IMG/VR virus record: IMGVR_UViG_3300049217_000071
Coordinates: 186,001-250,000 of that record
Length of the DNA stretch: 64,000 bases
Reading direction: 5' to 3' (one strand)
In this document: positions 14,533-62,056 of the stretch, piece after piece
Layout: each line of letters begins with the position of its first letter
Position numbering within the stretch: position 1 is the first letter of the stretch
Made by a program: the position numbers and the translations under genes
Notes under the pieces: generated by a model
What the model saw: only the letters and a program-made list of their open reading frames with translations
What the model was told of the DNA's origin: nothing
Database searches by the model: none

Positions 14533-15777
14533 ATGCAAATCGAAATTACCGAAGTAGAACCTTGTAAGCTGGTCGTTCATTATGAAGCTAACTTCCTAGA
14601 GATTTCTGACAAGCGAATGGAAGTTCAGAATGCTTTCAAGAAGGCGCCAGTTTCTGGTTTTAGACCCGGACACGCCTCTATGGATGCCATCAAGATGACC
14701 TATGGCAAGCAGATTGACGAAGCGCTCAAGCGTGCTTTGGCAGAAGATGCTTATCATAACACACTCTTCGAGAAGAAGCTCCGCCCACATGGCGCCCCTC
14801 GCTTCAACAATCTACTCTTGGATGGTGGCAAGTTCGTCTGTGAGTTCGAGCTATACACCAAGCCAGAGTTTGAATTGGCTGATTGGAAGGGAATGGAGAT
14901 CCCACAACCGCATCAAACTATGAATGCCAATATGGTTTTGGAGCAGATGCTGCAAGAAATGCGAACCAAGCTGGGAACGGCAGAACCTTACGGTGAAACC
15001 GATTTCGTCCAAAACGGAGACAGCATCATCGTGGATTACGAAGCTTCTATTGATGGAGTCAAGATCGACAATTTGAGCGTAGCTGGCGAGATGATGGTGG
15101 TCGGACAAAATCCTCTCAAGGGATTTGATGACAACTTTTTGGGAATGATTTCGGGTGAAACTCGTGAGTTTGATTTCGATGCTCCTGAAGGTGGCTTACC
15201 ATCTGTCTCTGGCAAGAGAGTTCACTTCAAGGTAACCGTAGCCACGGGTGCCAAGAATATTCCGTGTCCGTTGGATGATGAGTTGGCCAAGAAACTTGGT
15301 AAGAAAGATTATGCCGAGCTATTGGATCATGTTTCTCAAGCCGCCGCAATGCGTGTAGAAACCAACAAGAAGACACTTCTTCACGCAGCCATCGGTAATA
15401 AGATGGTGGCCGATACCAAAATTGCGGTCCCCAACTGGATGACTCTGTCAGAGGCGCAGTATTTGGCCGCTAATGCTCAGATGGATTGGAATGTTATGCA
15501 AGACACTGACAAAGAAAAGATGTTGCAGATGGCAGAAGGAAATGTCAAGCTAACCCTCATCTTGGATAAAGTTAGGGAATTAGAGCCTGCCGCTCAGTTG
15601 ACCGACCAGGAAGTGTTTGGGATTATCAAACACAACTTAGCTCAAAGCCAACAGGGCAATTTAGACGAAGTGATTCAGAATATGAATCGCACAGGTCAAT
15701 TACAGATTATGTTCTCTCGTATTAGGGACGTCAACGCTTTGGATTGCATTTCTAAACAGATCAAAGTAATCGAATAA
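14533..15777 (+). CDS. tig: Trigger factor
   Basis: GFRPGH ribosome-binding signature, FKBP-like middle domain (GFDDNFLGM), LDDELAK; 414 aa. Confidence 0.85.
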   Translation: MQIEITEVEPCKLVVHYEANFLEISDKRMEVQNAFKKAPVSGFRPGHASMDAIKMTYGKQIDEALKRALAEDAYHNTLFEKKLRPHGAPRFNNLLLDGGKFVCEFELYTKPEFELADWKGMEIPQPHQTMNANMVLEQMLQEMRTKLGTAEPYGETDFVQNGDSIIVDYEASIDGVKIDNLSVAGEMMVVGQNPLKGFDDNFLGMISGETREFDFDAPEGGLPSVSGKRVHFKVTVATGAKNIPCPLDDELAKKLGKKDYAELLDHVSQAAAMRVETNKKTLLHAAIGNKMVADTKIAVPNWMTLSEAQYLAANAQMDWNVMQDTDKEKMLQMAEGNVKLTLILDKVRELEPAAQLTDQEVFGIIKHNLAQSQQGNLDEVIQNMNRTGQLQIMFSRIRDVNALDCISKQIKVIE

Positions 15778-17104: not shown

Positions 17105-20100
17105 ATGACCGACTTTGTTTCATTGCATAATCAGACTGATTTTTCTATTCTCGATTCACTTATCTCTCCCAAGGCGCTGTTCAAGCGAGCCAAAGAATTG
17201 GGACAAACGGCCATCGCTATTACAGATCACGGATCGGTGGCAGCCGCCTGGGATGCCTGGAAGGCTTCCAAAGACACCGGAGTCAAGCTCATTATTGGGT
17301 GCGAGTGTTATTTTCAGAATGATGCCGCCAATGTCAATGAGAAGTTCCGACACATTGTTCTGTTGGCCAAGAATGCGGTAGGCTATCGCAATCTACTTAC
17401 ACTCAACAAAAAAGGTTTCGACCAGAGTTCCTTCGTAGGTAAGCGAGTGTATTCCGTTCTGGACTGGAAATTGTTGGAGCAATACTCTGAGGGGCTAATT
17501 TGTTTGACGGCCTGCGGTAATGGTGTGGTGAGTCAATTATTGATGAACCATAAGATGGATGAAGCGGAAGATACTGTGCTGCGCCTCAAGCAGATTTTCG
17601 GCCCTAATTTGGGTTTGGAAGTGCAGCCCAATAATATGAAGCGTGGTTCTAACATCTTCAATGATGAGATTGATCAGTTCTTTCTCAATCGCCAGCTCAT
17701 CAATCTGGGTAAGAAGCACAACATTAGAGTGGTGGCCGCCTGCAACGCCCACTATCTCAAGAAGGAAGAATCGGAAACACACGATGTCTTTTTGGCCATC
17801 GGTTCTCATCAACCTATCTTTTCCAACTTCCGTTTGCGTTATCCCGTCCCAGATTTTTACCTGAAGACCGGCGATGAGGTGAAGGCTTTCTTCACCAGAA
17901 ATTATGGCGAAGTTGTGGCACAAGAACTGTGCGACAACAGCCTTCATTTTGCCAATCTGTGCGAGAAGCCAGAGTGGATTGATCCCAAATACTCTAATCC
18001 TACTGGTAAAGAGCTTCCTATCTTTCCCGTCAAGGACGAGCCTGATTACCAAGAGTTCCTAGAATGGAGACGTGCTCGTCCAGCAGCAGAGCGGGTTTTG
18101 GATGAGGACAAGGCTTTCTTGCGCTTTCATTGCTCTAAGTATTTCGATGCTCGCATCAAGGGATTGAATGATTCCAATGTAGAGCAGTATCAAAACCGTT
18201 TAGTGGAAGAGTTGGATGTTATTGAGTATCACGGTTTCTCCAGCTATATGCTCATCGTGGCCGACTTCATTGATTGGGCTCGTAAACACGACATTGCAGT
18301 AGGTGATGGTCGTGGATCGGTAGGAGGTTCTCTGATTGGGTTCTTGTTAGGAATCCATCAAGCGGATCCTATCAAGTATAATCTGATCTTCGCCCGATTC
18401 CACAACAAGGAGAAGTCTAGCTTCCCAGATATTGATACGGACTTTGCTCCATCAGGTCGTGAGAAAGTGCAGAACTATCTCCGACAGAAATATGGTGACG
18501 ACCACGTAGCTCACGTGTCCAACGTCAATACCATTACGCCCAAAGTGTATGCCAGAGATATTGCACGTGCTTGCGAACTAGGCGGTTCCAAAGATGAGGC
18601 GGTCAAGATTGGTAATGAGGTGGCAGACTGTTTGCCAGCCGAAATCCATTCCATCGATGAAGCTTTGACCAAAGTTCCTTTGTTTGCCGAGTATGTCAAG
18701 AAGTATCCTGAGTTTGAGAAATACAAAGACATCTGTGGCAAGTATCGTGCTTGGTCTACTCACGCAGGTGGTATCGTTATCTCAGCCCGTCCTTTGACCG
18801 GATTGGTGCCGCTCAGAAAAGATAAGGATGGCGCTCTCGCTATTGAGTATGATAAGGATAAGGCCGAAGAAAACGGTCTGGTCAAGATGGATACCTTGGG
18901 CCTTTCTACCCTGGATATCATTGGTCAAACTATGCAACTGATCAAGGAAGCTGGTAAGCCATTGCCTGCTGAACCTATGGATTATGATGTGTATGACAAG
19001 GAAACCTATGACGTCATTTCTGGTGGCGATACCTTCTGCGTTTTCCAGTTGGGAACCAGCGGAGGCACGGTGGATTTGTGCCGTCGTATCAAGCCTAACA
19101 GCATCAATGATTTGGCCAACATCAACGCTTTGGCCAGACCTTCCGCTCGTGATATGCGCAATGACTTTATCAAGACGCGTAATGGGGAAAGGCCTATGTC
19201 TCTCTTGCACCCCAACCTAGGCCGTGCTTTCAATAGCACCTACGGATTCGGTTTGTATGAAGAGTGTTTGATGTATCTGGCTCAGGATATTGCCGGTTGG
19301 AGTTTGCATTCGGCTGACCGTTTGCGTAAGCTGACCAAAGAAAAAGGCAAGAACCCCAAGAAGGCTCAGGAATGGAGAACAGAGTTCATCAATGACGCTG
19401 TCAAAAACAATGTCAATGAAACCATTGCCAAGAGAATCTGGGACGAAGTTGTGGATAAGTTCCAAGGCTACGGCTTCAACGTTTCTCACGCTGTGCTGTA
19501 TTCGATGACTGGCTACAAGACGGCCTTTCTGAAAGCTCATTATCCAATTGAGTTTCTAATGGCCAACTTGATGGCGGAAGTCAAATCTAATACTCCTGAT
19601 GCTAGAGGCAACATTGAGAAGATCAAGAAAGAGCTACGCAAGCATCGTGTCAAGGTAGTGCCGCCCGATGTCAATAAGTCCCAACTGGTTTACACCATTG
19701 AAGATGGCAATCGACTCATCACCGGCTTGGATGCTATCAAGTTTGTGGGTGAGGACGCCATTAAAGACATTATCAGTAAGAGGCCCTTCAAGGACTTTTT
19801 CGATTTTATGGTGCGTGTCAGCTCTAAAGCTGTGCGAGCCAATAGCATTCAAGCTCTGGCTGCCTGTGGCGCCTTGGACTCTTTCAAGATTCCGCGTAAG
19901 CTAATGTTCTTGTATTGCTCGGACTATCGCAAGAAGCTACAAGTTTGGTTGAAGAAGCACGATCCCAATGTGGATCAGTTTGTGTATCCATATCCGTCCG
20001 AACCGGATTGGAGCGATCCTGAGCTATATGCTTTGGAACAGTATTATTTGGGTGAGTCTTTCATCTGTCGACCGGCCCTGGCCTATGGCAATTTCTTCAA

Positions 20101-20626
20101 GGATGATCACAAGACAACCCAAGATGTCAAGAAGGCCAAAGACAAAACCAACGTCAGTTCTTTCAAGGGAATTGTGCGTAGCTTCTTTGAGTTCCGAGTC
20201 AAAAAGGAAACCAGTAAGTATTACGGCAAGCCAATGATCAAAGCTGTCTTGGAAGATAAGAATGGTGATCAATGCACCTGCACCATCTTCCCCGATCGTT
20301 GGGAAACGGTCAAGCAACGTATTCAGGAACTCAACAAGAAGGTGGAATTTGGGGTGGGCATTGCTCTGCACTTTGCTGGCAACACCAATAGCTATGAAGA
20401 TTATATGGGTATCATCTTGGACAATCTGTTCAATATAGCTATTCCGCCTGGATTGCCGGTTGACTTGAAAGCCAAGAGAATCAATCTCAAGGAAGCTAGA
20501 GCCAAGCTTTCGCCGCAAGAGTTGGGTAAAAAGGTCAGAGATATCAAGGACTTGTTTGAGGAAATTGAAGACGTCCTATATGACGAGGGCCTCATCGATT
20601 TAGAGGATGATCCCGAAGATGACTGA
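17105..20626 (+). CDS. dnaE: DNA polymerase III alpha subunit
   Basis: PHP domain (AITDHG), GRGSVGGS, FPDIDTDF, HAGG, KMDTLGL, GYGFNVSHA; no intein seen. Confidence 0.97.
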   Translation: MTDFVSLHNQTDFSILDSLISPKALFKRAKELGQTAIAITDHGSVAAAWDAWKASKDTGVKLIIGCECYFQNDAANVNEKFRHIVLLAKNAVGYRNLLTLNKKGFDQSSFVGKRVYSVLDWKLLEQYSEGLICLTACGNGVVSQLLMNHKMDEAEDTVLRLKQIFGPNLGLEVQPNNMKRGSNIFNDEIDQFFLNRQLINLGKKHNIRVVAACNAHYLKKEESETHDVFLAIGSHQPIFSNFRLRYPVPDFYLKTGDEVKAFFTRNYGEVVAQELCDNSLHFANLCEKPEWIDPKYSNPTGKELPIFPVKDEPDYQEFLEWRRARPAAERVLDEDKAFLRFHCSKYFDARIKGLNDSNVEQYQNRLVEELDVIEYHGFSSYMLIVADFIDWARKHDIAVGDGRGSVGGSLIGFLLGIHQADPIKYNLIFARFHNKEKSSFPDIDTDFAPSGREKVQNYLRQKYGDDHVAHVSNVNTITPKVYARDIARACELGGSKDEAVKIGNEVADCLPAEIHSIDEALTKVPLFAEYVKKYPEFEKYKDICGKYRAWSTHAGGIVISARPLTGLVPLRKDKDGALAIEYDKDKAEENGLVKMDTLGLSTLDIIGQTMQLIKEAGKPLPAEPMDYDVYDKETYDVISGGDTFCVFQLGTSGGTVDLCRRIKPNSINDLANINALARPSARDMRNDFIKTRNGERPMSLLHPNLGRAFNSTYGFGLYEECLMYLAQDIAGWSLHSADRLRKLTKEKGKNPKKAQEWRTEFINDAVKNNVNETIAKRIWDEVVDKFQGYGFNVSHAVLYSMTGYKTAFLKAHYPIEFLMANLMAEVKSNTPDARGNIEKIKKELRKHRVKVVPPDVNKSQLVYTIEDGNRLITGLDAIKFVGEDAIKDIISKRPFKDFFDFMVRVSSKAVRANSIQALAACGALDSFKIPRKLMFLYCSDYRKKLQVWLKKHDPNVDQFVYPYPSEPDWSDPELYALEQYYLGESFICRPALAYGNFFKDDHKTTQDVKKAKDKTNVSSFKGIVRSFFEFRVKKETSKYYGKPMIKAVLEDKNGDQCTCTIFPDRWETVKQRIQELNKKVEFGVGIALHFAGNTNSYEDYMGIILDNLFNIAIPPGLPVDLKAKRINLKEARAKLSPQELGKKVRDIKDLFEEIEDVLYDEGLIDLEDDPEDD

Positions 20627-22339: not shown

Positions 22340-23509
22340 ATGCAATTACATCCTACTCAACTCGTCAAGACTTTTCTTCAGGACAAACCAGATTTAATGC
22401 AATCCTATGTGGATTGGGGAACTGTATTTGTGGAATACGCCCTTGCTCCTTTGGGAGGCATTCTATTGTATCTAATAGATGTGCAAGGATTAGACCCAAA
22501 CACTTCATCTATCCAAAAGTATTGCCGAGAATTAGAAGAGGCTGTGGCTAATGTGCAAGACACCAAAGATTTCGATTCTGATTATGATCTTTCTTGGGTA
22601 ACTAAGAAGTGGCAAGATGCCAATAGGGGACTGAAGGCTGTGCAATTGACTCAGGAGAAATTCAGGGAACTAACTGATTTGAGCGATATAGCAGATAAGC
22701 CGGCCGAAGTAGTCGTCAATGGTCGAGTAGCAGACAGTGAGGATGAGTTCTTTGCCAAATGCACCGAAATCAACCGTGTAGCGCCCCCTGCCCCAAAGCG
22801 AGAAATTCCTATCACCACTGAAGAGCAAGAAGCTCGTGATCAGCGTAAGCGCGATGTTCTAGAAAAAATGAAAGCCAAGATAGATTTGAGCAGCAAGTAT
22901 GGTCGTCAAGAGTATAGAAAAGTGGTAGCAGAAGAGGATATCTTGGACAATAATACCAAGTTCAATCCAGGTGGTTTTATGGAAGACAAGCTTAATGAAT
23001 TAGAAGAGCTACTTCAAAAAATGGAAAAGGACTCTCCTCCAAAGTCTAAGCCAACCAAGAAGGCTAACAAGATTACTAAGGTCAATCGAATCAATAAGCG
23101 CCCTTTCATCAAGAAGGAGCCGGCTACTCGTTTGTCCGATGATAATCTGTTGCGTGCCGAGAAGTTAGCTCGTGAAATGGTGGTCAAGGGGCTTTGCGAT
23201 GACAACAATGTTGCCATTGAAGCACAGATTGCTGAATTGGCTAGTCTCTCGAAGCCTTTAGAGGATTTGGCAAAGATTATCAAACGTCATACGCCCAAGA
23301 TACAGTTTTCCAAACGGGCTCATAAAGAAGCAGAGGAGATACAAACCCTAATCAAAAAGGGTCATTTAGATCCGAAAGATTTAGATGAACTGGTAAACAA
23401 TGGTGCTCGTCAAGAAAGTGTTGATTGTTGGAAGCAACAACATAATCACGAGTATAATGAAGCTACCAAGTTCAAGGGCAACTTCAGAAGGTCTCCTTCC
23501 AAAGGATAA
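22340..23509 (+). CDS. Hypothetical protein whose C-terminal part is paralogous to the scaffold C-terminus
   Basis: LAREMVVKGLC..RHTP and KEAEEIQTLIKKGHLDPKD..W match segments of 53149..56838. Confidence 0.7.
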   Translation: MQLHPTQLVKTFLQDKPDLMQSYVDWGTVFVEYALAPLGGILLYLIDVQGLDPNTSSIQKYCRELEEAVANVQDTKDFDSDYDLSWVTKKWQDANRGLKAVQLTQEKFRELTDLSDIADKPAEVVVNGRVADSEDEFFAKCTEINRVAPPAPKREIPITTEEQEARDQRKRDVLEKMKAKIDLSSKYGRQEYRKVVAEEDILDNNTKFNPGGFMEDKLNELEELLQKMEKDSPPKSKPTKKANKITKVNRINKRPFIKKEPATRLSDDNLLRAEKLAREMVVKGLCDDNNVAIEAQIAELASLSKPLEDLAKIIKRHTPKIQFSKRAHKEAEEIQTLIKKGHLDPKDLDELVNNGARQESVDCWKQQHNHEYNEATKFKGNFRRSPSKG

Positions 23510-25179: not shown

Positions 25180-25689
25180 ATGAGCCAACAAGTAAGACTT
25201 GGTGATTTGATAGGTTCTAACCCTGAGGAAGACTTCAGGAATTTCGACCTCACCGAGGTGCAGCAAGTGCTGAACCAACTTCAACAGGTAGACGCCATTG
25301 ACTTGGCGCACGCAGAATTTTTACAGCAACAAGCATTGAGAGGAGCCGACATCCTGGTAGAGTTTATGGCCAAGGTTGTCAAGACAGTAGGATATCTAGA
25401 AGCGAGAGTAAATAGCACGAAGAACAAAGTATCATTAGAATATGTGGCACCGGACGGTGCACGAACGACAGCAGATATGAAAAGATGGGCAGCCGATACA
25501 TCGCCCGAAGTAGAAAATGTGCAAAACAGACTAGCAGAAGCCAAGGGAGCCAAGGTTGCCCTGGAACGAAAATTCGATATAATCGTCAAAGCCCATCATC
25601 ATTATAAAGACATTGCGACCGGGCTGCGCAAGACGATCCTCGGATATAGTTCAGACATCAACGAAAAGGCGCCCGAAGGCTACGAATGA
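25180..25689 (+). CDS. Helical protein coupled to recA (possible UvsY-like mediator)
   Basis: Size, helical character and position; function is inference. Confidence 0.4.
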   Translation: MSQQVRLGDLIGSNPEEDFRNFDLTEVQQVLNQLQQVDAIDLAHAEFLQQQALRGADILVEFMAKVVKTVGYLEARVNSTKNKVSLEYVAPDGARTTADMKRWAADTSPEVENVQNRLAEAKGAKVALERKFDIIVKAHHHYKDIATGLRKTILGYSSDINEKAPEGYE

Positions 25690-26903
25690 TGGGAGATAAA
25701 ATGTCAGATGATAAGAAAAAGAAAGACGATAAGCTAACCGCGTTTTTCCGAAGTTTCGCCGAAGCTGATGCTGAATTGGATTTCAAGATGGCTCACGAAA
25801 TGGTGGGCGCCAAATTGCCAGGTAGTTCAACTGGTTCATTAGCATTAGATGATGCGTTATCATCTGGTAATCTGCCAAAGGGCAGGCTCTTTCAATATTA
25901 CGGTCCCACCGGTTCTGGTAAGACGCTGATGGCGATGCTAGCCCTCAAAGAAGCTCAGATTGCGGAACCAGGCACTCAGCAAGTTTTTATCGATGCTGAA
26001 GGCACTTTCGATTCTAATTGGGCAGAGGCTCTAGGATTAGACACTTCTAGGATCATCCATATCTTCGGTGAACAAGCCGTCAACGGACGTGATTGTTTCG
26101 AGATGCTTTTGGGTGTTCCCAAAGAAGATAAGAAGACTCACGAGTTGGTCGGCAAAAGCAAGGAAGGTTTGCTAGACAACATTATGAACGGTACCTTCAA
26201 CATCAATTTCGTGGTGTTGGATTCTCTGGGCGCCATCATCCCGCCAGGGGAAGATATCTCCCGAGTTGGTAAGATGAATATGGCCTTGCAGGCTAGATTC
26301 CTTACTACTACTTTCCGTAAGCTGTCTCTAGACGCCAACAAGGCTCAAGTCCCCTTTATTTTCATCAACCATCAGAAAGCTGGTATGGATCCTTACGGAC
26401 CTGACCACACCTTCTCGGGTGGTAATAGCTACGCTCACTTTTTGTCTGCCAACATCTATTTCGAGGCAGTGCAGAGAGCAGACGCTCAGATTCTAGATGC
26501 CAAGGAGCAGAAAATTGGGCATACGATGCGCGCCACTATTGAAAAGTCCAAGTTTGGACCGTGGCCAAGAAAATGTGAATTCAAGGTAAACTTCGGAATC
26601 GGTGTTATAGACAGGCACGAGGAAATCGCCCAACTGGCCGTGGATTACAACGTCGTTGTCAAGACGTCCACTGTCTCCCATGAATACGGAGATAAAAAGT
26701 GGGTAGGCTTTCCCAAGTTTTGTGAAGCAGTAAAAGAGGACCAAAACTTTGCGAATGAACTAGTTGTCAAAATTAGTGCAGCTCGTGAAGCAAAATGGGA
26801 AACAGCACGTAAAGAACAAGAAGCAAAAAAGAATGCCCTACTTGGAGTTGCAGTATCTGAAGAGGATATTGAAGCTTCTAAGAAAGGTAAGAAGGGTAAG
26901 TAA
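25686..26903 (+). CDS. recA: RecA recombinase
   Basis: STGSLALDDAL, GPTGSGKT, FIDAEG, VVLDSLGA, FINHQ, SGG. Confidence 0.93.
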   Translation: MMGDKMSDDKKKKDDKLTAFFRSFAEADAELDFKMAHEMVGAKLPGSSTGSLALDDALSSGNLPKGRLFQYYGPTGSGKTLMAMLALKEAQIAEPGTQQVFIDAEGTFDSNWAEALGLDTSRIIHIFGEQAVNGRDCFEMLLGVPKEDKKTHELVGKSKEGLLDNIMNGTFNINFVVLDSLGAIIPPGEDISRVGKMNMALQARFLTTTFRKLSLDANKAQVPFIFINHQKAGMDPYGPDHTFSGGNSYAHFLSANIYFEAVQRADAQILDAKEQKIGHTMRATIEKSKFGPWPRKCEFKVNFGIGVIDRHEEIAQLAVDYNVVVKTSTVSHEYGDKKWVGFPKFCEAVKEDQNFANELVVKISAAREAKWETARKEQEAKKNALLGVAVSEEDIEASKKGKKGK

Positions 26904-28498: not shown

Positions 28499-29059
28499 AT
28501 GTCCAAGATTATATTAGGGTTTGACGTTTCCAGTACCACCATCGGTTGGTGCGTTTTGAGTCTCGATGAGAAAAACAATATCTCTTTTGTCAAAGCAGAT
28601 TATGTGAAGCCAGTCAAGAAAGGCTCTATTATTGAGAGAATAGTAGATACCAGAGATAAAATCCAAAAAATCATTGACGAAGTCAAGCCAGACTATATTG
28701 GTATCGAAGATATCATCAAGTTTATGGCAGGGAAGAGTAGCGCTCAAACCATCATAATGCTAACTACATTCAATCGAATGATTGGATTATGTGCTTATGA
28801 TTATCTACATAGGTCTCCTGAATTGTTTAGTGTTATGACCATCAGACACGGACTCAAACTGGATAATGTCTTTCCAAAAAAAGAAGATATGCCCGCTCTT
28901 GTCTCGCAACGTTTAGGAATTATATTCCCTTACCAGCTCGGAAAAAAGGGCGCTCTCAAAGTGGAGAACTATGATATGGCGGACGGTATTGCCGTAGCGT
29001 TATATTATGCATTGGTTCTGACCGGGCAAACCAAGGTCAAGCGCAAGGGTAAGAAATGA
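28499..29059 (+). CDS. RuvC-like Holliday junction resolvase
   Basis: ILGFDVSSTTIGW, IGIED, DMADGIAVA. Confidence 0.8.
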   Translation: MSKIILGFDVSSTTIGWCVLSLDEKNNISFVKADYVKPVKKGSIIERIVDTRDKIQKIIDEVKPDYIGIEDIIKFMAGKSSAQTIIMLTTFNRMIGLCAYDYLHRSPELFSVMTIRHGLKLDNVFPKKEDMPALVSQRLGIIFPYQLGKKGALKVENYDMADGIAVALYYALVLTGQTKVKRKGKK

Positions 29060-30015
29060 ATCTCAAGGAAGCCTACGCAACTCTAGAACTTGCCGAGGGT
29101 GATACCCCGGAAGAGGCTAAGAAACAATACCGCAAGTTGACCAAGAAATATCATCCAGATGTTAGCAAAGAAAAAGATGCGGATGAGAAGATCAAGAAGA
29201 TCAATGAAGCCTATGAGTGTGTCAAGAATGGCAAAGGCAATGATCGCGAACCCGCTATGCAGCGTGGTAATGGGAGGTATAACCCTTTCCATAGACAACA
29301 AGTTGTGCAAATAGAGAATGTAGAGCTGCATCTAAGTATTGATTTCAAGGAATCCGTTTTAGGTTGTAAGAAAGAGGTCAAGTATTCTCGCAAAACCAAG
29401 TGTCAAAGCTGCGATGGATCTGGAGAGGTTGTTCTCAACAATGGATGTAAGAAATGTGGTGGTCGTGGTCAAGTAACCAGTCAGAGAAGTGGCATGATCT
29501 TTATGCAAACTTGTCCCGAGTGTTTTGGCAAGACCCACGTAACCGAGTGTACGGTTTGTCACGCGCAGGGGCTCACACAGACGGACGTGTCTGTGCAGGT
29601 GTCCGTACCTGCGGGCATAACTGATAAAGCCGTTTTGCGTTTGCAGGGTATGGGTAACTATGCTGGTTCGCTGATGGGATTTGTAGATCAGTATGCGGAT
29701 GTCTTTTGCCATGTCAATGTAGCTTCAGAGCCGGGCCTTCGTATAGAGGGTAAAAGCGTAGTAACGGATCTCAGTATCTCTTTGTTAGACGCTTTGCGCG
29801 GCTGTGAACGACAGGTCAAGACCATTTTTGGTACCAAGGGTATTACCATAAAGCCACATTCTAGAAACCATGACGAGGTGATTATTCCCCATCATGGAGT
29901 GGGTGGAACGGGAGATCAAAAGGTCATTCTGGACGTCCAATACCCCAAGAACGTAGATAAACTGATTGCTCTTTTAGCAGATGAGGTGAACCATGGCTTT
30001 GGCTCTGTACTGTAA
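29056..30015 (+). CDS. dnaJ: DnaJ co-chaperone
   Basis: J domain with HPD, four CxxCxxxG/K repeats, C-terminal domain. Confidence 0.92.
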   Translation: MNLKEAYATLELAEGDTPEEAKKQYRKLTKKYHPDVSKEKDADEKIKKINEAYECVKNGKGNDREPAMQRGNGRYNPFHRQQVVQIENVELHLSIDFKESVLGCKKEVKYSRKTKCQSCDGSGEVVLNNGCKKCGGRGQVTSQRSGMIFMQTCPECFGKTHVTECTVCHAQGLTQTDVSVQVSVPAGITDKAVLRLQGMGNYAGSLMGFVDQYADVFCHVNVASEPGLRIEGKSVVTDLSISLLDALRGCERQVKTIFGTKGITIKPHSRNHDEVIIPHHGVGGTGDQKVILDVQYPKNVDKLIALLADEVNHGFGSVL

Positions 30016-53148: not shown

Positions 53149-56100
53149 ATGACCATAATCAAACTGGGCGAAGCACACGAAATCAAACTAGAGTCGGCGG
53201 AGTCCTGTATTCCAGAAGTGAGCCCCGAGGTTCTAGAGAACTTTAGGAAGTTTGCTCAAAACCTCAAGAAGATCGCCCCTAAGGCTGAAGACTTCTTGTA
53301 TTTCTCTGCCGTTATGATGCATGCTGCCGAGGCCTCTTGTCTCAATGACGATGGCACTCCTAAACTAAATGTTCGAGGTGAAGCTGTCCAAGTAGGCTGG
53401 GATACCAGTAATGGAACTTGGAAATGGACTACCAATGATCCTAGCATTAAGCCTTATAAGAATTCTAATGGGGATATCTTCCCAGAATTAGAGTTAATCA
53501 AAGCTTACAAGAAATGGAAGCACAAGCCCCTCTGCGTGGATCATAAATCGAATTCGGTTGATCACGTCAGGGGCTTTATTGTTGATACTCACTACGATCG
53601 TAATCTCAAAAGAGTGATCGCATTATGTGCCTTAGATAAGGCTGGGTTTCCTCAACTAGCTCGTCAAATTTCTACTGGCGTTTCTAACTGCGTATCTATG
53701 GGTACGGCAGTGGGTCGTGCCATTTGCTATGATTGTCAAAGAGTCGCCCGCACGGAAGCCGATTTCTGCACTCATATGAAGAACAAGTCTTGCTACGGTG
53801 AAATAAACGTAGACCTCAATCCTATTGAACTTTCGATTGTGGTCAACGGTGCCGATCCTAGAGCCAGCATCAAGCATATTATCGCCGCAGCAAATACTCT
53901 TAATACCTATGTGGAGAATAAACAAAAGGAATTAGCTAAGTTAGCTGATCTTAACTTCAATGCTTCATTAAGTGTTGATGACCCACAAGGACAAGAAGGT
54001 TTGAGCCATACTCAGTTTCAAGTCAATGGCAATAATCTAGAAAAGTTCAAAGCTGACCTAGATCAAGCCTTTGCTAAACTATCTGAAATAGCCGGTACCG
54101 TAAAAAATACTGAAAAAGATACTAATCTTTCTGCATCTAATCAGTCGTCGGGTTCAATTGCGATGGATGAAGGCGCCCCGACTGATTCTGGATTGGCTCT
54201 CCAAACTCCGCAGACTGCAAGGTTTGCATCAGCAAGTGTAGAGGCGGAATCTCTAGCTGAACTTCACGAAATAACAGCCACTATTGAAGCAAAGCTAAAT
54301 CAAATGAAGCAGGGCTTAGAAAAACTAGCAGCTACTTCTACAAAAACACAAGAGGAAAATATGTCTGGATCAGAAAAACTAAAAGCACAAGGTTATTTCC
54401 AGGGCGCTGGTGGTGTTAACGAGCCTACTCCAGGCCAAGTTAAGTACCCTAAGGACCCACTTAATGAGCAACTTCGTGAACACGAAGACAAGCAGATGGT
54501 GGGCGAGCCTCCTTTCCCAGAAGTGGGACCAGTGGACGGCATGCATCCTTCTCCAAGTTCGGCTGATCCTTCCGACGAGTTAGCTCGTAAGAAGATGTTA
54601 GCTCGTGCTGATCTAGAAGAGCGCGCTATGAAGCGTAATGCCATCGTTCAGTTGGCAAAAGAAGCTCTAGAGAGCAAGTCTTACTTTCAAGGTGGCGGTG
54701 GCGTCAATGAGCCAACCCCAAACAAGCCAAAGTATCCAAAGGACAAGCTCAACGAAGAGCTACGTGAATACGAAGACAAGCAAATGGTTGGTCAACCACC
54801 ATTCCCAGGCGTAGGTCCTGTCGACGGTCTTCACCCATCCCCATTCTCCGCAGATCCAAAGGATGAATTGAAGCGTAAGAAAATGCTCGCCAGAGCTTCC
54901 TTGAGAGCCAGATTCGTCAAGGCTGCCAATGGTGACGGTACCCAGAACAAGTCCAAGAGTGCTTGGGAAGTTTTCCTAGGCGACAAGCTCCTATTGACTG
55001 CTTCTGTCGATGAACTATCCGGTGGACACACCGACATGTTGTATGACAGCATTGCTACCAAGGAATTTGGTGGTAAATTGATCGAAAAGGTCAAGGTCAA
55101 TGGTGCTCCAGCCGTAGCCCAACTAATCAAGAAGGCTCAGCCTATGCCTCCAGCCCCTCCGGGTGGTGATGCAGGTGCCCCTCCAGAAGCTCCAGACCCA
55201 GATGCTGGTCCTCCAGTAGAAGATGCTGGTAAGTCTGGTGATCCAAAGCAACACGCTATGGAATTGGCTAAGACAGTTAGAGACACTGCCTCCGATTTGA
55301 TGGAAGCTGTTCGCGCCCTTACCGGCGAGAGCGCTGAAATGGGTGGTGAAGGTTCTAGCGCACCAGAAGGTGGCGTTGGTGGACCAGCAGGTGGACCAGC
55401 CGCGATGGCTGATGACTCCTCAGGTTCCGGCTCTGCTACAGGCAAGACCTCTACCGCTGAAGGTTTTAGTACTGCAACTCTCAATAACTTGAGAAAGGAA
55501 CTCAACAGTTCTCTAACTCTCGCTATGAAAGAAGCTGTCGCTGAACTCAACGATCACGGTCAAGAATTGGACATGATTGTCAGCATGTACGACAAGGGTG
55601 CTGTTACCGATCAAAACTCTGACTTCGTCAACAACGTCGTAACCGACGCCTTGAATGAAGCCAAGACTACCGTGGCTGACGGATTCAAGCTAATGACCGC
55701 TTTCGTCAAGTATGCCCGTGGTACTCAAGCTATTGTCAAGCGTGCTGAGATCGAAACCGAACTTCAAGCACTTGCAACTGAAGGAGATACTATGAGCGAT
55801 ACAAAAGATAGTCACTCCGCAGATGGCGGTGACTTAATGGGACTAATCAACGACACCAACGCAGATCTAGACGCTGTCAAGATGATGGTTGATGATAATG
55901 ACCACGAAGGTGGCATGGAAGGACTAGATGACTTAGATGACTTAGGTGATCTAGGACTCGATGGTCTATCCGAAGGTTTAGTTGATGATAACGCTGGTGT
56001 GATGGTTGATACCCCAGCCAAAGCCGCAGAGGTTACCAAAATGAATCCAGATGCTAGTGTAAAAGTTGCCTCCTTTGATACCAAAGAGGGCCGCGCAGCT

Positions 56101-56838
56101 CTAAGAGCCAAGTTGGCCGCTGATGCTACCGGCAAGGAAGAGAATGGAGAAATCCAGGATGCTTCCAAGATTAAGTTCAGTGATATGTTGGATCAAGCCG
56201 ACAAGTTGACTGATGGTCAAACTCAATTGGATGTTAAGCCATCCGATAGTCTTGGATTGGTAGAAACTCTACCAGAAGTTAATAAGGCTATGTTGGAACT
56301 TGCTAAGGCTCCACCAAACGTCCGTAAGGAAGCTGCTGCAATCCAGAAACTCGTTTCTGAAGGCAAGCTAGATCCAAAGGATGTGGACGCTCTAGTCGCA
56401 GAAGGTCTAGACAAGGAAGCTGTCTCTTACTGGAAGAAATACTACGGTGAAGTTGATGGTGGCGGTGAATTTGCCAGTGAATTGGTGAAGGAACATGTCA
56501 AGTCCGCAATGGCCGAAGAACTAAACCAGTTCAGAGTCAAGCTAGCTCGTGCCTACGAATTAGCTTATGATATGGCTGACCGTGGACTATGTCATCACGA
56601 AAGACCAGCAATTAGCGCTCAAGTGGATGAAATCATGAAGTTCAATGATGAATCCTTTGACTCTCTCAAGAGAGTAGTTGCTCGTCACACTCCATTACTT
56701 CACAAGGAAGCTGGACGTATCCCACAAGTTGGTTTGAGAGGTGATCAAGATGTCACCCCATCTACCCAAGCAGTGGTTGAAGAGGATGCATATGCACAGC
56801 TATCTTCAATGTTCGGCACCAAACGCGGTGTGTTCTAA
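53149..56838 (+). CDS. Prohead maturation protease (HK97/assemblin clan)-scaffold fusion
   Basis: PLCVDH..VRGFIVD, VSMG, ELSIVVNGADP.A in the N-terminal ~260 aa; long helical/acidic remainder. Confidence 0.8.
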   Translation: MTIIKLGEAHEIKLESAESCIPEVSPEVLENFRKFAQNLKKIAPKAEDFLYFSAVMMHAAEASCLNDDGTPKLNVRGEAVQVGWDTSNGTWKWTTNDPSIKPYKNSNGDIFPELELIKAYKKWKHKPLCVDHKSNSVDHVRGFIVDTHYDRNLKRVIALCALDKAGFPQLARQISTGVSNCVSMGTAVGRAICYDCQRVARTEADFCTHMKNKSCYGEINVDLNPIELSIVVNGADPRASIKHIIAAANTLNTYVENKQKELAKLADLNFNASLSVDDPQGQEGLSHTQFQVNGNNLEKFKADLDQAFAKLSEIAGTVKNTEKDTNLSASNQSSGSIAMDEGAPTDSGLALQTPQTARFASASVEAESLAELHEITATIEAKLNQMKQGLEKLAATSTKTQEENMSGSEKLKAQGYFQGAGGVNEPTPGQVKYPKDPLNEQLREHEDKQMVGEPPFPEVGPVDGMHPSPSSADPSDELARKKMLARADLEERAMKRNAIVQLAKEALESKSYFQGGGGVNEPTPNKPKYPKDKLNEELREYEDKQMVGQPPFPGVGPVDGLHPSPFSADPKDELKRKKMLARASLRARFVKAANGDGTQNKSKSAWEVFLGDKLLLTASVDELSGGHTDMLYDSIATKEFGGKLIEKVKVNGAPAVAQLIKKAQPMPPAPPGGDAGAPPEAPDPDAGPPVEDAGKSGDPKQHAMELAKTVRDTASDLMEAVRALTGESAEMGGEGSSAPEGGVGGPAGGPAAMADDSSGSGSATGKTSTAEGFSTATLNNLRKELNSSLTLAMKEAVAELNDHGQELDMIVSMYDKGAVTDQNSDFVNNVVTDALNEAKTTVADGFKLMTAFVKYARGTQAIVKRAEIETELQALATEGDTMSDTKDSHSADGGDLMGLINDTNADLDAVKMMVDDNDHEGGMEGLDDLDDLGDLGLDGLSEGLVDDNAGVMVDTPAKAAEVTKMNPDASVKVASFDTKEGRAALRAKLAADATGKEENGEIQDASKIKFSDMLDQADKLTDGQTQLDVKPSDSLGLVETLPEVNKAMLELAKAPPNVRKEAAAIQKLVSEGKLDPKDVDALVAEGLDKEAVSYWKKYYGEVDGGGEFASELVKEHVKSAMAEELNQFRVKLARAYELAYDMADRGLCHHERPAISAQVDEIMKFNDESFDSLKRVVARHTPLLHKEAGRIPQVGLRGDQDVTPSTQAVVEEDAYAQLSSMFGTKRGVF
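54394..54897 (+). repeat. Two copies (288-nt period) of a ~72-aa module YFQG.GGVNEPTP...RKKMLARA
   Basis: Seen in the translation. Confidence 0.9.
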
Positions 56839-56868: not shown

Positions 56869-57651
56869 ATGAAAAACCAAAGCGTATCAGATTTTGTCGC
56901 TGCAACTATGGATGCAGTGCTAAACAGCCCAGAACACAAAGCCTTGTTCGGCTCCCAATACAAGTATGCACAGTCCAAGGATGCTATGTGCGCCAAGCAC
57001 GGCAAAATGGACTCTTGCGCAGCCGATGATCAAGATGCCAAGAAGAAGGACTCTAGCTCTGCCTCTGACATGAACGATGCCAGAAAAGTAAAGAAGTATG
57101 ACTCTTCTGATGCAGATGACCAGGATGCTAAGAAGAAAGACTCTTCCGATGCTGATGATCAAGATGCTAAGAAGATGCCACCATGGCTAAAGAAGAGGGA
57201 CGAATCTTCTGCTGACGATCAAGATGCCAAGAAGAAAGATTCTTCTGACGCAGATGATCAAGACGCCAAGAAGAAAGACTCTTCCGATGCTGACGATCAA
57301 GATGCCAAAAAGAAGGACTCTTCTGACGCTGATGATGACGACCTAGAGGCTTCTGCCGCTTTTGATATTGCTATCGATAGTTTGCTCACCGCCTCCGCCG
57401 CTCTTGATTCCGTGGGTCTCGGTAAGGGCTCTTCAGTTATCTTGAAGGTAGCTTCTTTGGTTGTTGAAGCCAAGAAGAAGGAAAAGGATTCCAAGAAAAA
57501 GAAGAAGGAAGACTCTAAGAAGAGTGATTCCAAGAAGTCTTCTACCAAGGATTCTCAATCCGCTAAGGACAAGAAGTCTCCTCCAAAGAAAGACTCCAAG
57601 AAGGATGAGAAGAAATCCTCTTCCAAGCCTTCCTCTTCTTCCAAGAAGTAA
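56869..57651 (+). CDS. Low-complexity D/K/S-rich putative internal head protein
   Basis: GAGGA SD; DSSDADDQDAKKK repeats. Confidence 0.65.
   Translation: MKNQSVSDFVAATMDAVLNSPEHKALFGSQYKYAQSKDAMCAKHGKMDSCAADDQDAKKKDSSSASDMNDARKVKKYDSSDADDQDAKKKDSSDADDQDAKKMPPWLKKRDESSADDQDAKKKDSSDADDQDAKKKDSSDADDQDAKKKDSSDADDDDLEASAAFDIAIDSLLTASAALDSVGLGKGSSVILKVASLVVEAKKKEKDSKKKKKEDSKKSDSKKSSTKDSQSAKDKKSPPKKDSKKDEKKSSSKPSSSSKK
57025..57340 (+). repeat. Tandem ~39-nt coding repeats (DSSDADDQDAKKK, about 7 copies)
   Basis: Units diverge at synonymous positions. Confidence 0.9.
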
Positions 57652-57777: not shown

Positions 57778-58338
57778 ATGAATACAACCATCTGTTCAAT
57801 ATATAAAATTGTCAATAATATGGACGGCAATGTATATATTGGGCAAACATGGATTCCTGTTCAAGCTAGATTTAGGAGGCACAAGTATGCTTCCAGTAAT
57901 TGCATCAAGCTTGCAAGAGCCATAAAAAAGTACGGAGAAGATAACTTCAAAGTCGAACTAATTACTGTCTGTGGCACCCAAGAGGTTGCAGATTATTTGG
58001 AAGCCTATTTTATCAACAAATTTGACTCTATCAGGAGTGGATACAACATACTGGCTGGTGGTAAGACAAGTAGCAGAAGGGGAGCAAAACACTCCCAAGA
58101 AACTAAGGATAAACTGTCAAAATTAGCCACAGGGCGTAGGCACTCGATCGAGACAAAAGAAACTCTGTCCGCACTAAGAAAAGGCATTCCACTCTCGATC
58201 GAACATAGATCCAAGTTATCAGAGGCTAAGAAAGGCAAAAAGTTCACCGAAGAGCATAAATCTAAATTACTTGGAAATCATAAGGGCATGACGTGGAATA
58301 TAGTAGACGGCAAAAGAGTGTGGATGGAGAAACGATGA
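57778..58338 (+). CDS. GIY-YIG homing endonuclease with NUMOD3 repeats
   Basis: SIYKI..VYIGQT, GYN, HSQETKDKLS repeats. Confidence 0.9.
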   Translation: MNTTICSIYKIVNNMDGNVYIGQTWIPVQARFRRHKYASSNCIKLARAIKKYGEDNFKVELITVCGTQEVADYLEAYFINKFDSIRSGYNILAGGKTSSRRGAKHSQETKDKLSKLATGRRHSIETKETLSALRKGIPLSIEHRSKLSEAKKGKKFTEEHKSKLLGNHKGMTWNIVDGKRVWMEKR

Positions 58339-60096: not shown

Positions 60097-60816
60097 ATGG
60101 AAACGCACTACCTATACAAAATCACGGATACGCTAAATAACAAGGTTTACATCGGTCAAACGGCTGATAACAAAAAGAGATGGTCGCAACACAAGGCTTA
60201 CGCCAAACATCCTGAAAAAACGGGCCAATACATCCATCGTGCGATAGCAAAATATGGTGTGGAGAATTTTATATTCGAAATCATTGCTGCCTGCAAGACA
60301 CAAGAAGATACTGATGAAACTGAGAGTGTTCTAATTGAGCAATATGATAGTCGCAATAAAGAGCACGGATATAATCTGATGATTGGTGGCAGCCATGGAG
60401 GACATTCAGAAGAAACGAAGAAGAAACAATCCGATGCTACTTTCAAGCAAATTGCCGAGAAAGGTCATCCCGCCCAAGGCACCAAACGAACTCCCGAACA
60501 AATCCAACATCTTGTGCAAGCTCGTCAAGAAAACCCGGTGGAATATACACCAGAAATCAGACAACGAATGTCAGAAGCACATATAGGACATACGGAGTCA
60601 GAAGAAACCAAGCAAAAGAAATCGGAAGCTGCTACCTCAGATTGGGAGAAACGCAATGCCATCCGAGAGGCAACGGGAGAATTGAAATGCAACGCCCCTG
60701 GTTGTAATATCTCTGGCAGCAAGCAAGCCTACAAAATGATCAATGGTATCAGCTATTGCAACAAGCACGGACTGCGTCTGTGGCGCTATGGCAGACTAGA
60801 TCGCATAAACCCCTGA
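60097..60816 (+). CDS. GIY-YIG homing endonuclease with NUMOD3-like repeats and C-terminal Cys/His motif
   Basis: YLYKIT..VYIGQT..RW..H, GYNL. Confidence 0.9.
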   Translation: METHYLYKITDTLNNKVYIGQTADNKKRWSQHKAYAKHPEKTGQYIHRAIAKYGVENFIFEIIAACKTQEDTDETESVLIEQYDSRNKEHGYNLMIGGSHGGHSEETKKKQSDATFKQIAEKGHPAQGTKRTPEQIQHLVQARQENPVEYTPEIRQRMSEAHIGHTESEETKQKKSEAATSDWEKRNAIREATGELKCNAPGCNISGSKQAYKMINGISYCNKHGLRLWRYGRLDRINP

Positions 60817-60892: not shown

Positions 60893-62056
60893 ATGACATT
60901 CAAGCACGTAAAATTCGCGGATTCTCCTACCATGCGATCCCTAGAAAAGGTAGCTTATGACAAAGGCTGGGTCAAACCAGAGCCATTGGTCAGAACATCC
61001 TCTCCAAAGGCGCCTAATTTGGCACCTACTGATAACCTGATGACCAACATACTCAAGTTGTGTGCTGGCCTTCGTGGAACTCAGAGTATGGAAAAGTATG
61101 CTGATGAATTAGAGACCTGCTACCTCAACTACAAGAGTGCCCAAACAATGTATGATGCACACGGTGAAAAAGGTGAAGATGTTATTCACTCGGCTCATCC
61201 AAAGGGGAGCCATAAGTTAGAGGGCGTAGATAGCAGCGAAGCTGTCTTCGAGGATATTCTTGACCAACACGTCAAGTCATTACAGATGATTGAGAAGAAG
61301 CCAAGTGGCAAATTGAGCGACGCTGCCCAGATTATGGGTGCCGTAAAAAAAGCCTTGGGGGCGGAAACAACTCTTGATGAACTTTATGCGACTGCCGGTG
61401 AGGCTTTCCAAAAGTTTAGAAGATTGTATTTTGCCATCGTTCTCAAGCTAGGTGAAGAGGGAACATATAACGAGCAATTTTTAGATGCCGTTCAAAACTA
61501 TAACCTTGGACAAAAAAAGATTGACAGTAGTATTAGGGACTCTGCTTTAGTTAGCTCACTTGATGGTCTAAAAGAAGAAAAGGCCCCAGGAATGTTGTCC
61601 GGTGGTACTGCCAGGGCTACTTGGGCAAATGAAATACTACCAATATTTAAGATTGCTTATCGATATGCAGAACAATTTAGAGATGCTATTGCTAAGATAC
61701 GTACACTGGAAGCAAGATCCGTGCAGCAGTCTACTACTAAAGAATTTGATCCCGAATCTCTTTCTGTTACACCAATTTCTTCCGATCCAACAACTAGCGG
61801 TGTAGCTCAACAATTGCTGCCGCTTTACAATGAGATTACACAAAGTATTGGGCAATCCAAAACTAAAGCTGCCACCCTACCTAATGGCGCCGCCCTTTCT
61901 GTTTGGTTTGACAAGGCTCAACAGCTTGCTAAAACCACTTTCGAACTTGGTTTTCAACAAGCCGCTAAAAATCCTGCGGCAGCTCAACAGCTCTTGAGTA
62001 AACTGACGGATATCAAAGCTAAAGTTGATAGGGCTCAGCAGAAATTATCGGTATGA
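60893..62056 (+). CDS. Putative virion protein
   Basis: GAGG SD; KSAQ; helical module. Confidence 0.55.
   Translation: MTFKHVKFADSPTMRSLEKVAYDKGWVKPEPLVRTSSPKAPNLAPTDNLMTNILKLCAGLRGTQSMEKYADELETCYLNYKSAQTMYDAHGEKGEDVIHSAHPKGSHKLEGVDSSEAVFEDILDQHVKSLQMIEKKPSGKLSDAAQIMGAVKKALGAETTLDELYATAGEAFQKFRRLYFAIVLKLGEEGTYNEQFLDAVQNYNLGQKKIDSSIRDSALVSSLDGLKEEKAPGMLSGGTARATWANEILPIFKIAYRYAEQFRDAIAKIRTLEARSVQQSTTKEFDPESLSVTPISSDPTTSGVAQQLLPLYNEITQSIGQSKTKAATLPNGAALSVWFDKAQQLAKTTFELGFQQAAKNPAAAQQLLSKLTDIKAKVDRAQQKLSV

What the first reader, a model, noticed from the sequence alone, without database searches (positions are those of the whole stretch)
23147..23436. Permuted copy of the scaffold C-terminus inside a replication-region gene
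Seen: ORF 22340 contains LLRAEKLAREMVVKGLCDDNNVAIEAQIAEL..LAKIIKRHTP followed by HKEAEEIQTLIKKGHLDPKDLDELVNNGARQESVDCWK. The protease-scaffold about 33 kb away (56323-56715) has RKEAAAIQKLVSEGKLDPKDVDALVAEGLDKEAVSYWK first and KLARAYELAYDMADRGLCHHERPAISAQVDEI..LKRVVARHTPLLHKEA second. These are the same two blocks in swapped order, joined at the shared KEA. A possible internal start (AGGTGG..ATG 22979) precedes them. Known: scaffold C-termini often bind coat protein (P22, herpesviruses). Inference: a capsid-targeting tag for cargo, or an early scaffold mimic that times assembly or interferes with related phages.
Basis: partly seen in the sequence, partly recalled or inferred. Interest (0 to 1): 0.7.

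Follow-up and report, generated by a model that had tools for sequence, protein, structure and literature searches.

The report
Scaffold modules reshuffled into replication-block gene
A fast-evolving gene beside the DNA polymerase of a giant phage carries diverged, order-swapped copies of two small helical modules from the head protease-scaffold protein, which probably plug it into head assembly, though binding is not shown.

Summary
ORF 22340-23509 (389 aa) contains two blocks homologous to the C-terminal region of the 1229-aa prohead protease-scaffold (53149-56838), in swapped order. BLASTP gives E 1e-8 and 4e-8; scaffold-only HMMs give E 6.6e-12 (block B) and 6e-7 (block A); 300 shuffles never exceed 23.5 bits against 44.7 and 41.6 observed.

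It is not a simple circular permutation. The gene belongs to a family fixed between DnaE and RecA in a clade of ~450-500 kb phages. Relatives carry B-A (scaffold order), A-B, A-tail-B, A only, or neither.

- **Origin:** module trees fit one old capture from the scaffold, followed by rearrangement and loss.
- **Selection:** the modules are under purifying selection (dN/dS 0.11-0.26).
- **Position:** they lie 40-170 residues upstream of the scaffold's C-terminal tail, which is not shared.
- **Extent:** in four complete relatives no other gene carries them, so there is no general tag system.
- **New finding:** the family's central helix resembles the major capsid protein's N-arm helix.

My best reading (about 0.4) is a passenger or adaptor docking onto the scaffold/coat network. 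Binding is untested: the one complex prediction gave no answer.

The parts
22340..23509 (+). ORF P0001 (389 aa). Member of a fast-evolving family fixed between DnaE and RecA in a ~450-500 kb phage clade.
   Evidence: Whole-gene dN/dS 0.12-0.15.
22340..22699 (+). Family-defining N-domain (res 1-120; motifs NPDL..Y, VQGLDP, DYDxSW, LTDLS). Function unknown.
   Evidence: Alignments. No Pfam, PHROG, PDB or Atlas match. AF2 pLDDT only 50-67.
22976..23032 (+). Central amphipathic helix (res 213-231), a degenerate copy of a family motif that resembles the capsid protein's N-arm helix.
   Evidence: Family-motif HMM hits the MCP N-arm at E 2.5e-4, the top non-self hit of 4675 ORFs. The reciprocal MCP N-arm HMM hits relatives at E 6.6e-6 to 0.2 but not this copy. 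SD-like context.
23123..23308 (+). Module A copy (res 262-323), three helices.
   Evidence: Scaffold-only HMM E 6e-7. BLASTP E 4e-8. AF2 pLDDT 80-90, helices 267-282, 290-302 and 307-316. dN/dS 0.12-0.26.
23309..23455 (+). Module B copy (res 324-372), three short helices.
   Evidence: Scaffold-only HMM E 6.6e-12. BLASTP E 1e-8. AF2 pLDDT about 90, helices 325-339, 345-353 and 358-367. dN/dS 0.11-0.19.
23468..23506 (+). Family-wide basic tail KFKGxFRR, kept even by relatives that lack A and B.
   Evidence: It does not match the scaffold tail.
53149..56838 (+). Prohead protease-scaffold fusion (1229 aa).
   Evidence: PHROG head maturation protease E 1.8e-11; Bacillus phage G gp19 E 7e-18. More than 325 homologs.
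53248..53943 (+). Protease domain (res 34-265).
   Evidence: Most conserved part, 0.88 identity.
56311..56460 (+). Scaffold module B (res 1055-1104).
56521..56718 (+). Scaffold module A (res 1125-1190). Its first helix is continuous with a 40-residue helix that starts at res 1105.
56788..56835 (+). Scaffold terminal helix plus basic/aromatic end (res 1214-1229). Not shared with ORF 22340.
   Evidence: AF2 helix 185-193 of the model. Lower conservation, 0.45. Tail HMM negative.

Best explanation
SHOWN. ORF 22340 belongs to a rapidly evolving protein family that always sits between the DnaE polymerase and RecA genes in a clade of ~450-500 kb phages. An ancestor of this family captured two small three-helix modules (B then A) from the C-terminal third of the prohead protease-scaffold. 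In the window's lineage their order is A-B. Other lineages keep B-A, have A-tail-B, keep A alone, or have cleanly deleted both. The copies are old: 34-49% identity, no DNA similarity, and a separate branch from all scaffold copies. They are kept by purifying selection. The family core also contains a helix resembling the N-arm helix of the major capsid protein, a lysine-rich disordered linker and a basic KFKGxFRR tail.

INFERRED. A and B are portable interaction modules. They bind the same partner as in the scaffold, which is either neighbouring scaffold chains or the coat protein's inner face or N-arm. The protein is therefore drawn into the assembling prohead core as a passenger or adaptor, riding on the scaffold/coat network. 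It may then be trimmed by the prohead protease and leave with, or stay on, the DNA. Because order and presence vary, each module would act on its own and add avidity rather than being essential to the family's core job.
For: Homology and significance.

Matching helix boundaries and high confidence for the A-B region (pLDDT 80-94).

Family architectures and strict synteny.

Single old origin:
- Family A copies separate from scaffold A copies by one branch (SH-aLRT 89).
- Family B copies of all orders sit on one side of a branch (96).
- Architecture changes at least 7 times on the N-domain tree.
- L011 looks like a clean deletion of the B-A cassette relative to its sisters P0139 and P0141.

Purifying selection on A and B.

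The scaffold A/B region is well conserved (0.76-0.77 identity) while its extreme tail is not (0.45), and the coat protein is 90-97% conserved. This fits A/B contacting a conserved partner.

Invariant polar Gln and the RGLC motif are shared by scaffold and family A copies.

Coat N-arm-like helix in the family.

A third, unrelated protein family (PheRS-N-like coiled coil) carries two B modules that nest among scaffold B copies, so B is portable.

Precedent: the scaffold C-terminal region of phage 80alpha, and its mimic CpmB, bind the coat N-arm helix (PMC5644958).
Against: - No binding evidence. The ESMFold2 complex of the coat protein with res 262-389 scored 0.17, below the mark of 0.32, so it gave no answer.
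- The modules are not the scaffold's extreme C-terminus, which is the coat-binding element in 80alpha, P22, lambda and herpesviruses. Their partner in the scaffold is therefore unknown.
- The gene lies among replication genes, not head genes. No expression data exist, because only DNA runs hold the sequence.
- Many relatives lack B or both modules, including three of four complete genomes. The modules are dispensable for the family.
- The N-arm-like helix is degenerate in this particular copy.
- No fold or family match gives the N-domain a function.
Confidence: 0.4

Rival explanations
1. Assembly regulator or competitor that is not packaged. It would be made with the replication genes and use scaffold-like modules, plus a coat N-arm-like helix, to occupy coat and/or scaffold interfaces. 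This would hold back or localise head assembly until DNA is ready.
For: Position in the DnaE-RecA block. Mimics of both sides of a presumed coat-scaffold interface. The CpmB precedent for competition at the scaffold site.
Against: No timing data. The modules are missing in many relatives, so any such control is optional. The modules are far more diverged than the scaffold's own, which argues against efficient competition for a 90-97% conserved coat protein.
Confidence: 0.2
2. Generic helical self-association modules. A and B serve only to oligomerise whichever protein carries them (scaffold, this family, the PheRS-N-like family). This gene's job would lie in replication or recombination with no link to capsids.
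For: B occurs in a third protein family in a non-structural neighbourhood with TubZ, UvsW and sugar enzymes. The modules are upstream of the scaffold tail. Order and presence vary freely. Fold searches show only generic helical arrangements.
Against: The independent resemblance of the family's central helix to the coat N-arm is not expected for a pure replication protein. In the complete genomes searched, the modules occur nowhere else.
Confidence: 0.25
3. A nested product from the internal start at 22979 (M214). This would give a 176-aa scaffold-like protein (N-arm-like helix, linker, A, B, tail), in the manner of lambda C/Nu3 or herpesvirus UL26/UL26.5.
For: The ATG is in frame and is preceded by aggtgg-tttt, similar to Shine-Dalgarno-like sequences of other genes here. 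The start coincides with the beginning of the N-arm-like helix.
Against: M214 is present only in the closest relatives and absent in the rest of the family. The purine-rich run is also the Gly-Gly codons. There are no transcript or ribosome data.
Confidence: 0.1
4. Chance similarity, or a decaying remnant without function.
For: None beyond the shortness of the blocks.
Against: E-values, shuffle controls and scaffold-only HMMs. dN/dS 0.11-0.26. Confident predicted folds.
Confidence: 0.02

Closest known systems
SaPI1 CpmB versus the phage 80alpha scaffolding protein
   Same: A second protein carries a diverged copy of part of the scaffold's C-terminal region. In 80alpha that region contacts the coat N-arm helix (PMC5644958).
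   Different: CpmB is encoded by a parasite island and shares the extreme C-terminal helix-and-hook. Here the phage itself encodes the copy in a conserved replication block. The shared parts are two upstream modules of about 50-65 residues, permuted, and the terminal tail is not shared.
Nested protease/scaffold pairs (lambda C/Nu3; herpesvirus UL26/UL26.5)
   Same: The architecture of a protease fused to a scaffold. A shared scaffold C-terminal region brings a second polypeptide into the procapsid (own knowledge).
   Different: Those pairs share identical residues by in-frame nested translation. Here there is a separate gene 33 kb away with 34-49% identity and swapped order.
T4 capsid-targeting sequence and the internal or ejection proteins of giant phages (phiKZ, SPN3US)
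   Same: Non-structural cargo directed into the prohead core, often basic and fast-evolving, and trimmed by the prohead protease (own knowledge; PMC5694885 and PMC10052503 listed, not read).
   Different: The CTS is a short N-terminal leader used by several proteins of one phage. Here folded modules near the C-terminus occur in one gene per genome.
Encapsulin cargo-loading peptides, and engineered cargo fused to the P22 scaffold C-terminus
   Same: The concept of a C-terminal element that docks cargo to the inside of an HK97-fold shell (own knowledge).
   Different: Those use short peptides or a single helix-turn-helix with demonstrated binding. No binding is shown here.

Membership tests
Scaffold module B of this phage clade | Significant match to a profile built only from protease-scaffold proteins | tested here: met
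   E 6.6e-12 among 4675 ORFs. BLASTP 49% identity, E 1e-8.
Scaffold module B of this phage clade | Same three-helix layout | tested here: met
   Helices 325-339, 345-353 and 358-367 align with scaffold helices 1056-1071, 1076-1084 and 1089-1100.
Scaffold module A of this phage clade | Significant match to a scaffold-only profile, and the shared invariant residues (L, M, Q; RGLC motif) | tested here: met
   E 6e-7. Invariant L14, M18 and Q34 in alignment A6. Helix boundaries coincide.
True circular permutation of one domain | The same two segments in both orders in homologous proteins | tested here: met
   Scaffold B-A against this ORF's A-B. Both orders also occur within the family.
True circular permutation of one domain | A and B pack into a single compact domain whose termini are adjacent | not testable with these tools
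   Model coordinates and contact maps are not returned. A occurs alone in many relatives, which argues for independent modules.
True circular permutation of one domain | A tandem-duplication intermediate (B-A-B or A-B-A) | tested here: not met
   One B and one A per carrier among 154-157 proteins, except the unrelated B-B family. Only a 4-residue RKEA echo follows scaffold A.
Capsid-targeting tag system (T4 CTS, encapsulin CLP type) | The same tag on several unrelated cargo proteins of one genome | tested here: not met
   In four complete relatives, and in the 268 kb held here, only the scaffold and this gene family carry A or B.
Capsid-targeting tag system (T4 CTS, encapsulin CLP type) | Physical binding to the shell or scaffold core | tested here: inconclusive
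   The complex prediction with the coat protein gave no answer, score 0.17 against a mark of 0.32.
Scaffold mimic of the CpmB kind | Shares the scaffold's terminal coat-binding helix-and-hook | tested here: not met
   A profile of the family tail does not find the scaffold terminus. The shared modules end about 40 residues before it.
Nested scaffold gene (lambda Nu3, UL26.5) | In-frame overlap with the protease-scaffold gene | tested here: not met
   Separate ORF 33 kb upstream, with no DNA similarity.

The most novel reading that the evidence does not exclude
The family is a natural, phage-encoded adaptor built from mimics of both sides of the coat-scaffold interface: a coat N-arm-like helix plus scaffold modules A and B. 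It would load itself, and perhaps bound DNA or replication factors, into the prohead of giant phages. The modules would be freely permutable and repeatedly lost, which would make this a cargo-loading principle in tailed phages distinct from short leader peptides.
Probability: 0.2. Interest if true: 0.75.

Novelty: new variant of a known kind. Interest (0 to 1): 0.55.

Why it matters
Giant phages package many proteins with their DNA, yet outside T4-like leader peptides the address labels are unknown. This locus offers a defined, testable candidate: two small scaffold-derived modules that moved into an unrelated, fast-evolving gene. They were reshuffled in every possible order and are still under selection.

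If they dock to the scaffold or coat, they would give a handle on how cargo enters megaphage heads. They would also map which part of a 1229-residue protease-scaffold makes the key contacts, and supply a portable natural tag for loading phage capsids. If they do not, they show that scaffold segments are reused as general oligomerisation modules.

Tried and rejected
- **Complex prediction.** Coat protein (337 aa, from just outside the window) with res 262-389 of the ORF gave no answer (score 0.17, mark 0.32). It counts neither for nor against binding.
- **Fold searches.** The ORF model against PDB (Foldseek, best E 1.8) and the scaffold C-terminal model against 48,161 chains (best Z 6.1, generic helices) gave nothing usable.
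- **Other annotation searches.** Pfam and PHROGs on the ORF found no family. tblastn of the ORF against 50,697 phage records found no match. The ESM Atlas gave nothing for the N-domain. A PDB sequence search with the protease domain found no hit.
- **Shared 'KGxF' tail.** The idea that the family tail KFKGxFRR copies the scaffold's terminal KGxF was rejected. A tail profile does not find the scaffold among 4675 ORFs.
- **Recent gene conversion from the resident scaffold.** Rejected, because there is no DNA similarity and the family copies branch apart from all scaffold copies.
- **Expression timing.** Only DNA metagenomes (moss, lake water, soil) hold the sequence and no RNA runs do.
- **Tree quality.** The careful tree for module A did not finish in time. 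Quick IQ-TREE trees were used and their support values are modest.

Full report
**Setting.** The window is bases 186001-250000 of a 268-kb IMG/VR virus record that CheckV rates 62% complete. Close relatives are complete genomes of 447-481 kb, so this is a giant phage. It comes from moss, lake-water and soil metagenomes. Around the finding lie a DnaE-type polymerase (17105-20626), a RecA/UvsX recombinase (25686-26903), trigger factor and DnaJ. The head module lies 20-45 kb further on: terminase 43951, portal 45911, and the 1229-aa protease-scaffold 53149-56838. The major capsid protein (MCP) lies just beyond the window at G000:C1:253810-254820 (PHROG major head protein, E 4e-78).

ORF 22340-23509 (389 aa, P0001) and the protease-scaffold (P0002) share two blocks.
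- Block B: P0001 329-369 against P0002 1060-1100, 49% identity, E 1e-8.
- Block A: P0001 270-344 against P0002 1132-1201, 34% identity, E 4e-8.
- The order is A-B in the ORF and B-A in the scaffold.

Three hundred shuffles of the scaffold never scored above 23.5 bits, against 44.7 and 41.6 observed. Profiles built from 126 other scaffolds alone pick out this ORF as the only other carrier among 4675 six-frame ORFs of the record (B at E 6.6e-12, A at E 6e-7). AlphaFold2 predicts three helices for each block, with boundaries that coincide in the two proteins. The A-B region is the confident part of the ORF model, with pLDDT 80-94. In the scaffold, the first helix of A is the end of a 40-residue helix that the ORF lacks. 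The two DNA stretches are not alike.

**What the gene is.** Homolog searches found a family with a conserved N-domain of about 120 residues. In 17 related viral contigs the gene always sits in the same block: DnaE, an HTH protein, sometimes a small ORF, this gene, three conserved ORFs, then RecA. The family evolves fast, at 25-37% identity between lineages. Meanwhile the MCP is 90-97% identical and the scaffold C-terminal 200 residues are 66-82% identical. All members keep four features: the N-domain, a central amphipathic helix, a lysine-rich linker and a basic tail KFKGxFRR.

What lies between linker and tail varies:
- A-B: this ORF, its close relatives, P0136 and P0155.
- B-A, the scaffold order: P0137, P0139 and P0141.
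- A-tail-B: P0140.
- A only: most IMG/VR loci.
- Nothing: L011, L012/13, L016 and L019/20.

L011 looks like a clean excision of the B-A cassette relative to its sisters.

**History.**
- On a tree of A modules, scaffold and family copies separate by one branch (SH-aLRT 89).
- On a tree of B modules, all family copies lie on one side of a branch whatever their order (96). The B pairs of a third family nest among scaffold copies.
- On the N-domain tree the architecture changes at least seven times.

The simplest reading is one old capture of B and A from the scaffold, followed by repeated swaps and losses. Support values are modest because the modules are short. No carrier has a B-A-B or A-B-A arrangement. 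The classical duplication-deletion route to a circular permutation is therefore not documented.

**Are the copies functional?** Between this ORF and two relatives for which DNA was available, dN/dS is 0.12-0.26 for A and 0.11-0.19 for B, against 0.12-0.15 for the whole gene. dS is near saturation, so these values are rough. The modules are maintained, not decaying. Scaffold and family A copies share an invariant glutamine and the RGLC motif.

**How far does the 'tag' idea go?** In four complete relatives, B occurs only in the scaffold. A occurs in the scaffold and, in one genome, in this gene's ortholog. There is thus no set of cargo proteins sharing the tag. However, a third, unrelated family (P0145 and P0154) has a PheRS-N-like coiled coil and sits in a phage contig with TubZ and UvsW. 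It carries two B modules, so B is portable.

The modules are not the scaffold's end. About 40 residues follow A, ending in a predicted helix and a basic/aromatic tail. That tail is not shared with the family. In 80alpha it is exactly such a terminal helix-and-hook that binds the coat N-arm (PMC5644958). On the other hand, the scaffold's A/B region is well conserved (0.76-0.77 identity) and its last 29 residues are not (0.45). This would fit A/B touching the nearly invariant coat protein. That is inference only.

**An unexpected addition.** The family's central helix resembles the N-arm helix of the MCP (res 13-33, conserved across the clade).
- A profile of the family helix alone finds the MCP N-arm as the best non-self hit in the genome, at E 2.5e-4, with the next hit at E about 2.
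- A profile of the MCP N-arm alone finds family members at the homologous position: L016 at 6.6e-6, L019 at 8.6e-3, P0137 at 0.044 and P0139 at 0.2. These rank ahead of all background, where noise starts at about 1.3.
- The copy in this window (res 213-231) is degenerate and is not hit.

The family may therefore carry likenesses of both partners of a coat-scaffold contact.

**Mechanism.** My best reading, at about 0.4, is that A and B are independent docking modules. They would bind what they bind in the scaffold, either neighbouring scaffold chains or the coat's inner face. The protein would then be carried into the prohead core as a passenger or adaptor. Its basic, disordered and fast-evolving nature fits an internal head protein.

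The rivals are:
- an unpackaged regulator or competitor of assembly (0.2);
- plain oligomerisation modules with no capsid role (0.25);
- a nested product from M214 (0.1, not exclusive of the others).

The one complex prediction allowed (MCP plus res 262-389) gave no answer. No RNA data exist. Nothing here demonstrates binding.

**Verdict.** This is a real, statistically solid and evolutionarily dynamic reuse of scaffold modules by a replication-block gene. It is a new variant of the known theme of proteins sharing scaffold C-terminal regions (CpmB, Nu3, UL26.5). The function is still open.

Noticed in passing
window 22976-23032; MCP at G000:C1:253810-254820 (L022:4811-5821); relatives L016, L019, P0137, P0139: The family's central helix resembles the N-arm helix of the major capsid protein, with reciprocal profile hits (E 2.5e-4; E 6.6e-6 to 0.2). 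The copy in this window is degenerate.
   Followed up: partly
window 54394-54609 and 54682-54897: The scaffold part of the protease-scaffold holds a 72-residue tandem duplication (res 416-487 and 512-583) with 59 of 72 residues identical. This region is well conserved across the clade (about 0.75 identity).
   Followed up: partly
window 57778-58338 and 60097-60816: Two GIY-YIG homing endonuclease genes (PHROG 314, E 1e-34 and 1e-37) sit inside the head gene module, between the scaffold and the paralogous 387-aa ORFs.
   Followed up: no
window 56869-57651: The ORF directly after the scaffold is built of repeats of the type DDQDAKKKDSS(D/S)A and ends in a Lys/Ser-rich tail. It has no family match.
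   Followed up: no
window 14533-15777, 29056-30015, 17105-20626: The phage encodes host-like chaperones, namely a full trigger factor and a DnaJ with zinc-finger domain. It also encodes a DnaE-type Pol III alpha subunit.
   Followed up: no
L014/L015/L017:6599-6985 (three contigs, identical loci): In this relative the N-domain and the A-plus-tail part of the family gene are in different frames. The shift is at a run of six C, and the downstream frame is intact. This could be an assembly error, a recent frameshift or phase variation.
   Followed up: partly
L103:6084-7802 (P0145) and P0154: An unrelated phage protein with a PheRS-alpha N-terminal-like coiled coil (PF02912) carries two copies of module B. 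Its neighbours are TubZ, a UvsW-like helicase and sugar-modifying enzymes.
   Followed up: partly
window 60893-62056, 62053-63216, 63216-end and onward in L022: A run of four or five similar-sized ORFs (about 370-410 aa) without family matches lies between the scaffold and the major capsid protein. They may be paralogous head proteins.
   Followed up: no
L016:8930-11179: In one relative the RecA gene is interrupted. The RecA matches cover residues 1-116 and 404-750 of a 750-aa ORF, which suggests an intein or another insertion.
   Followed up: no
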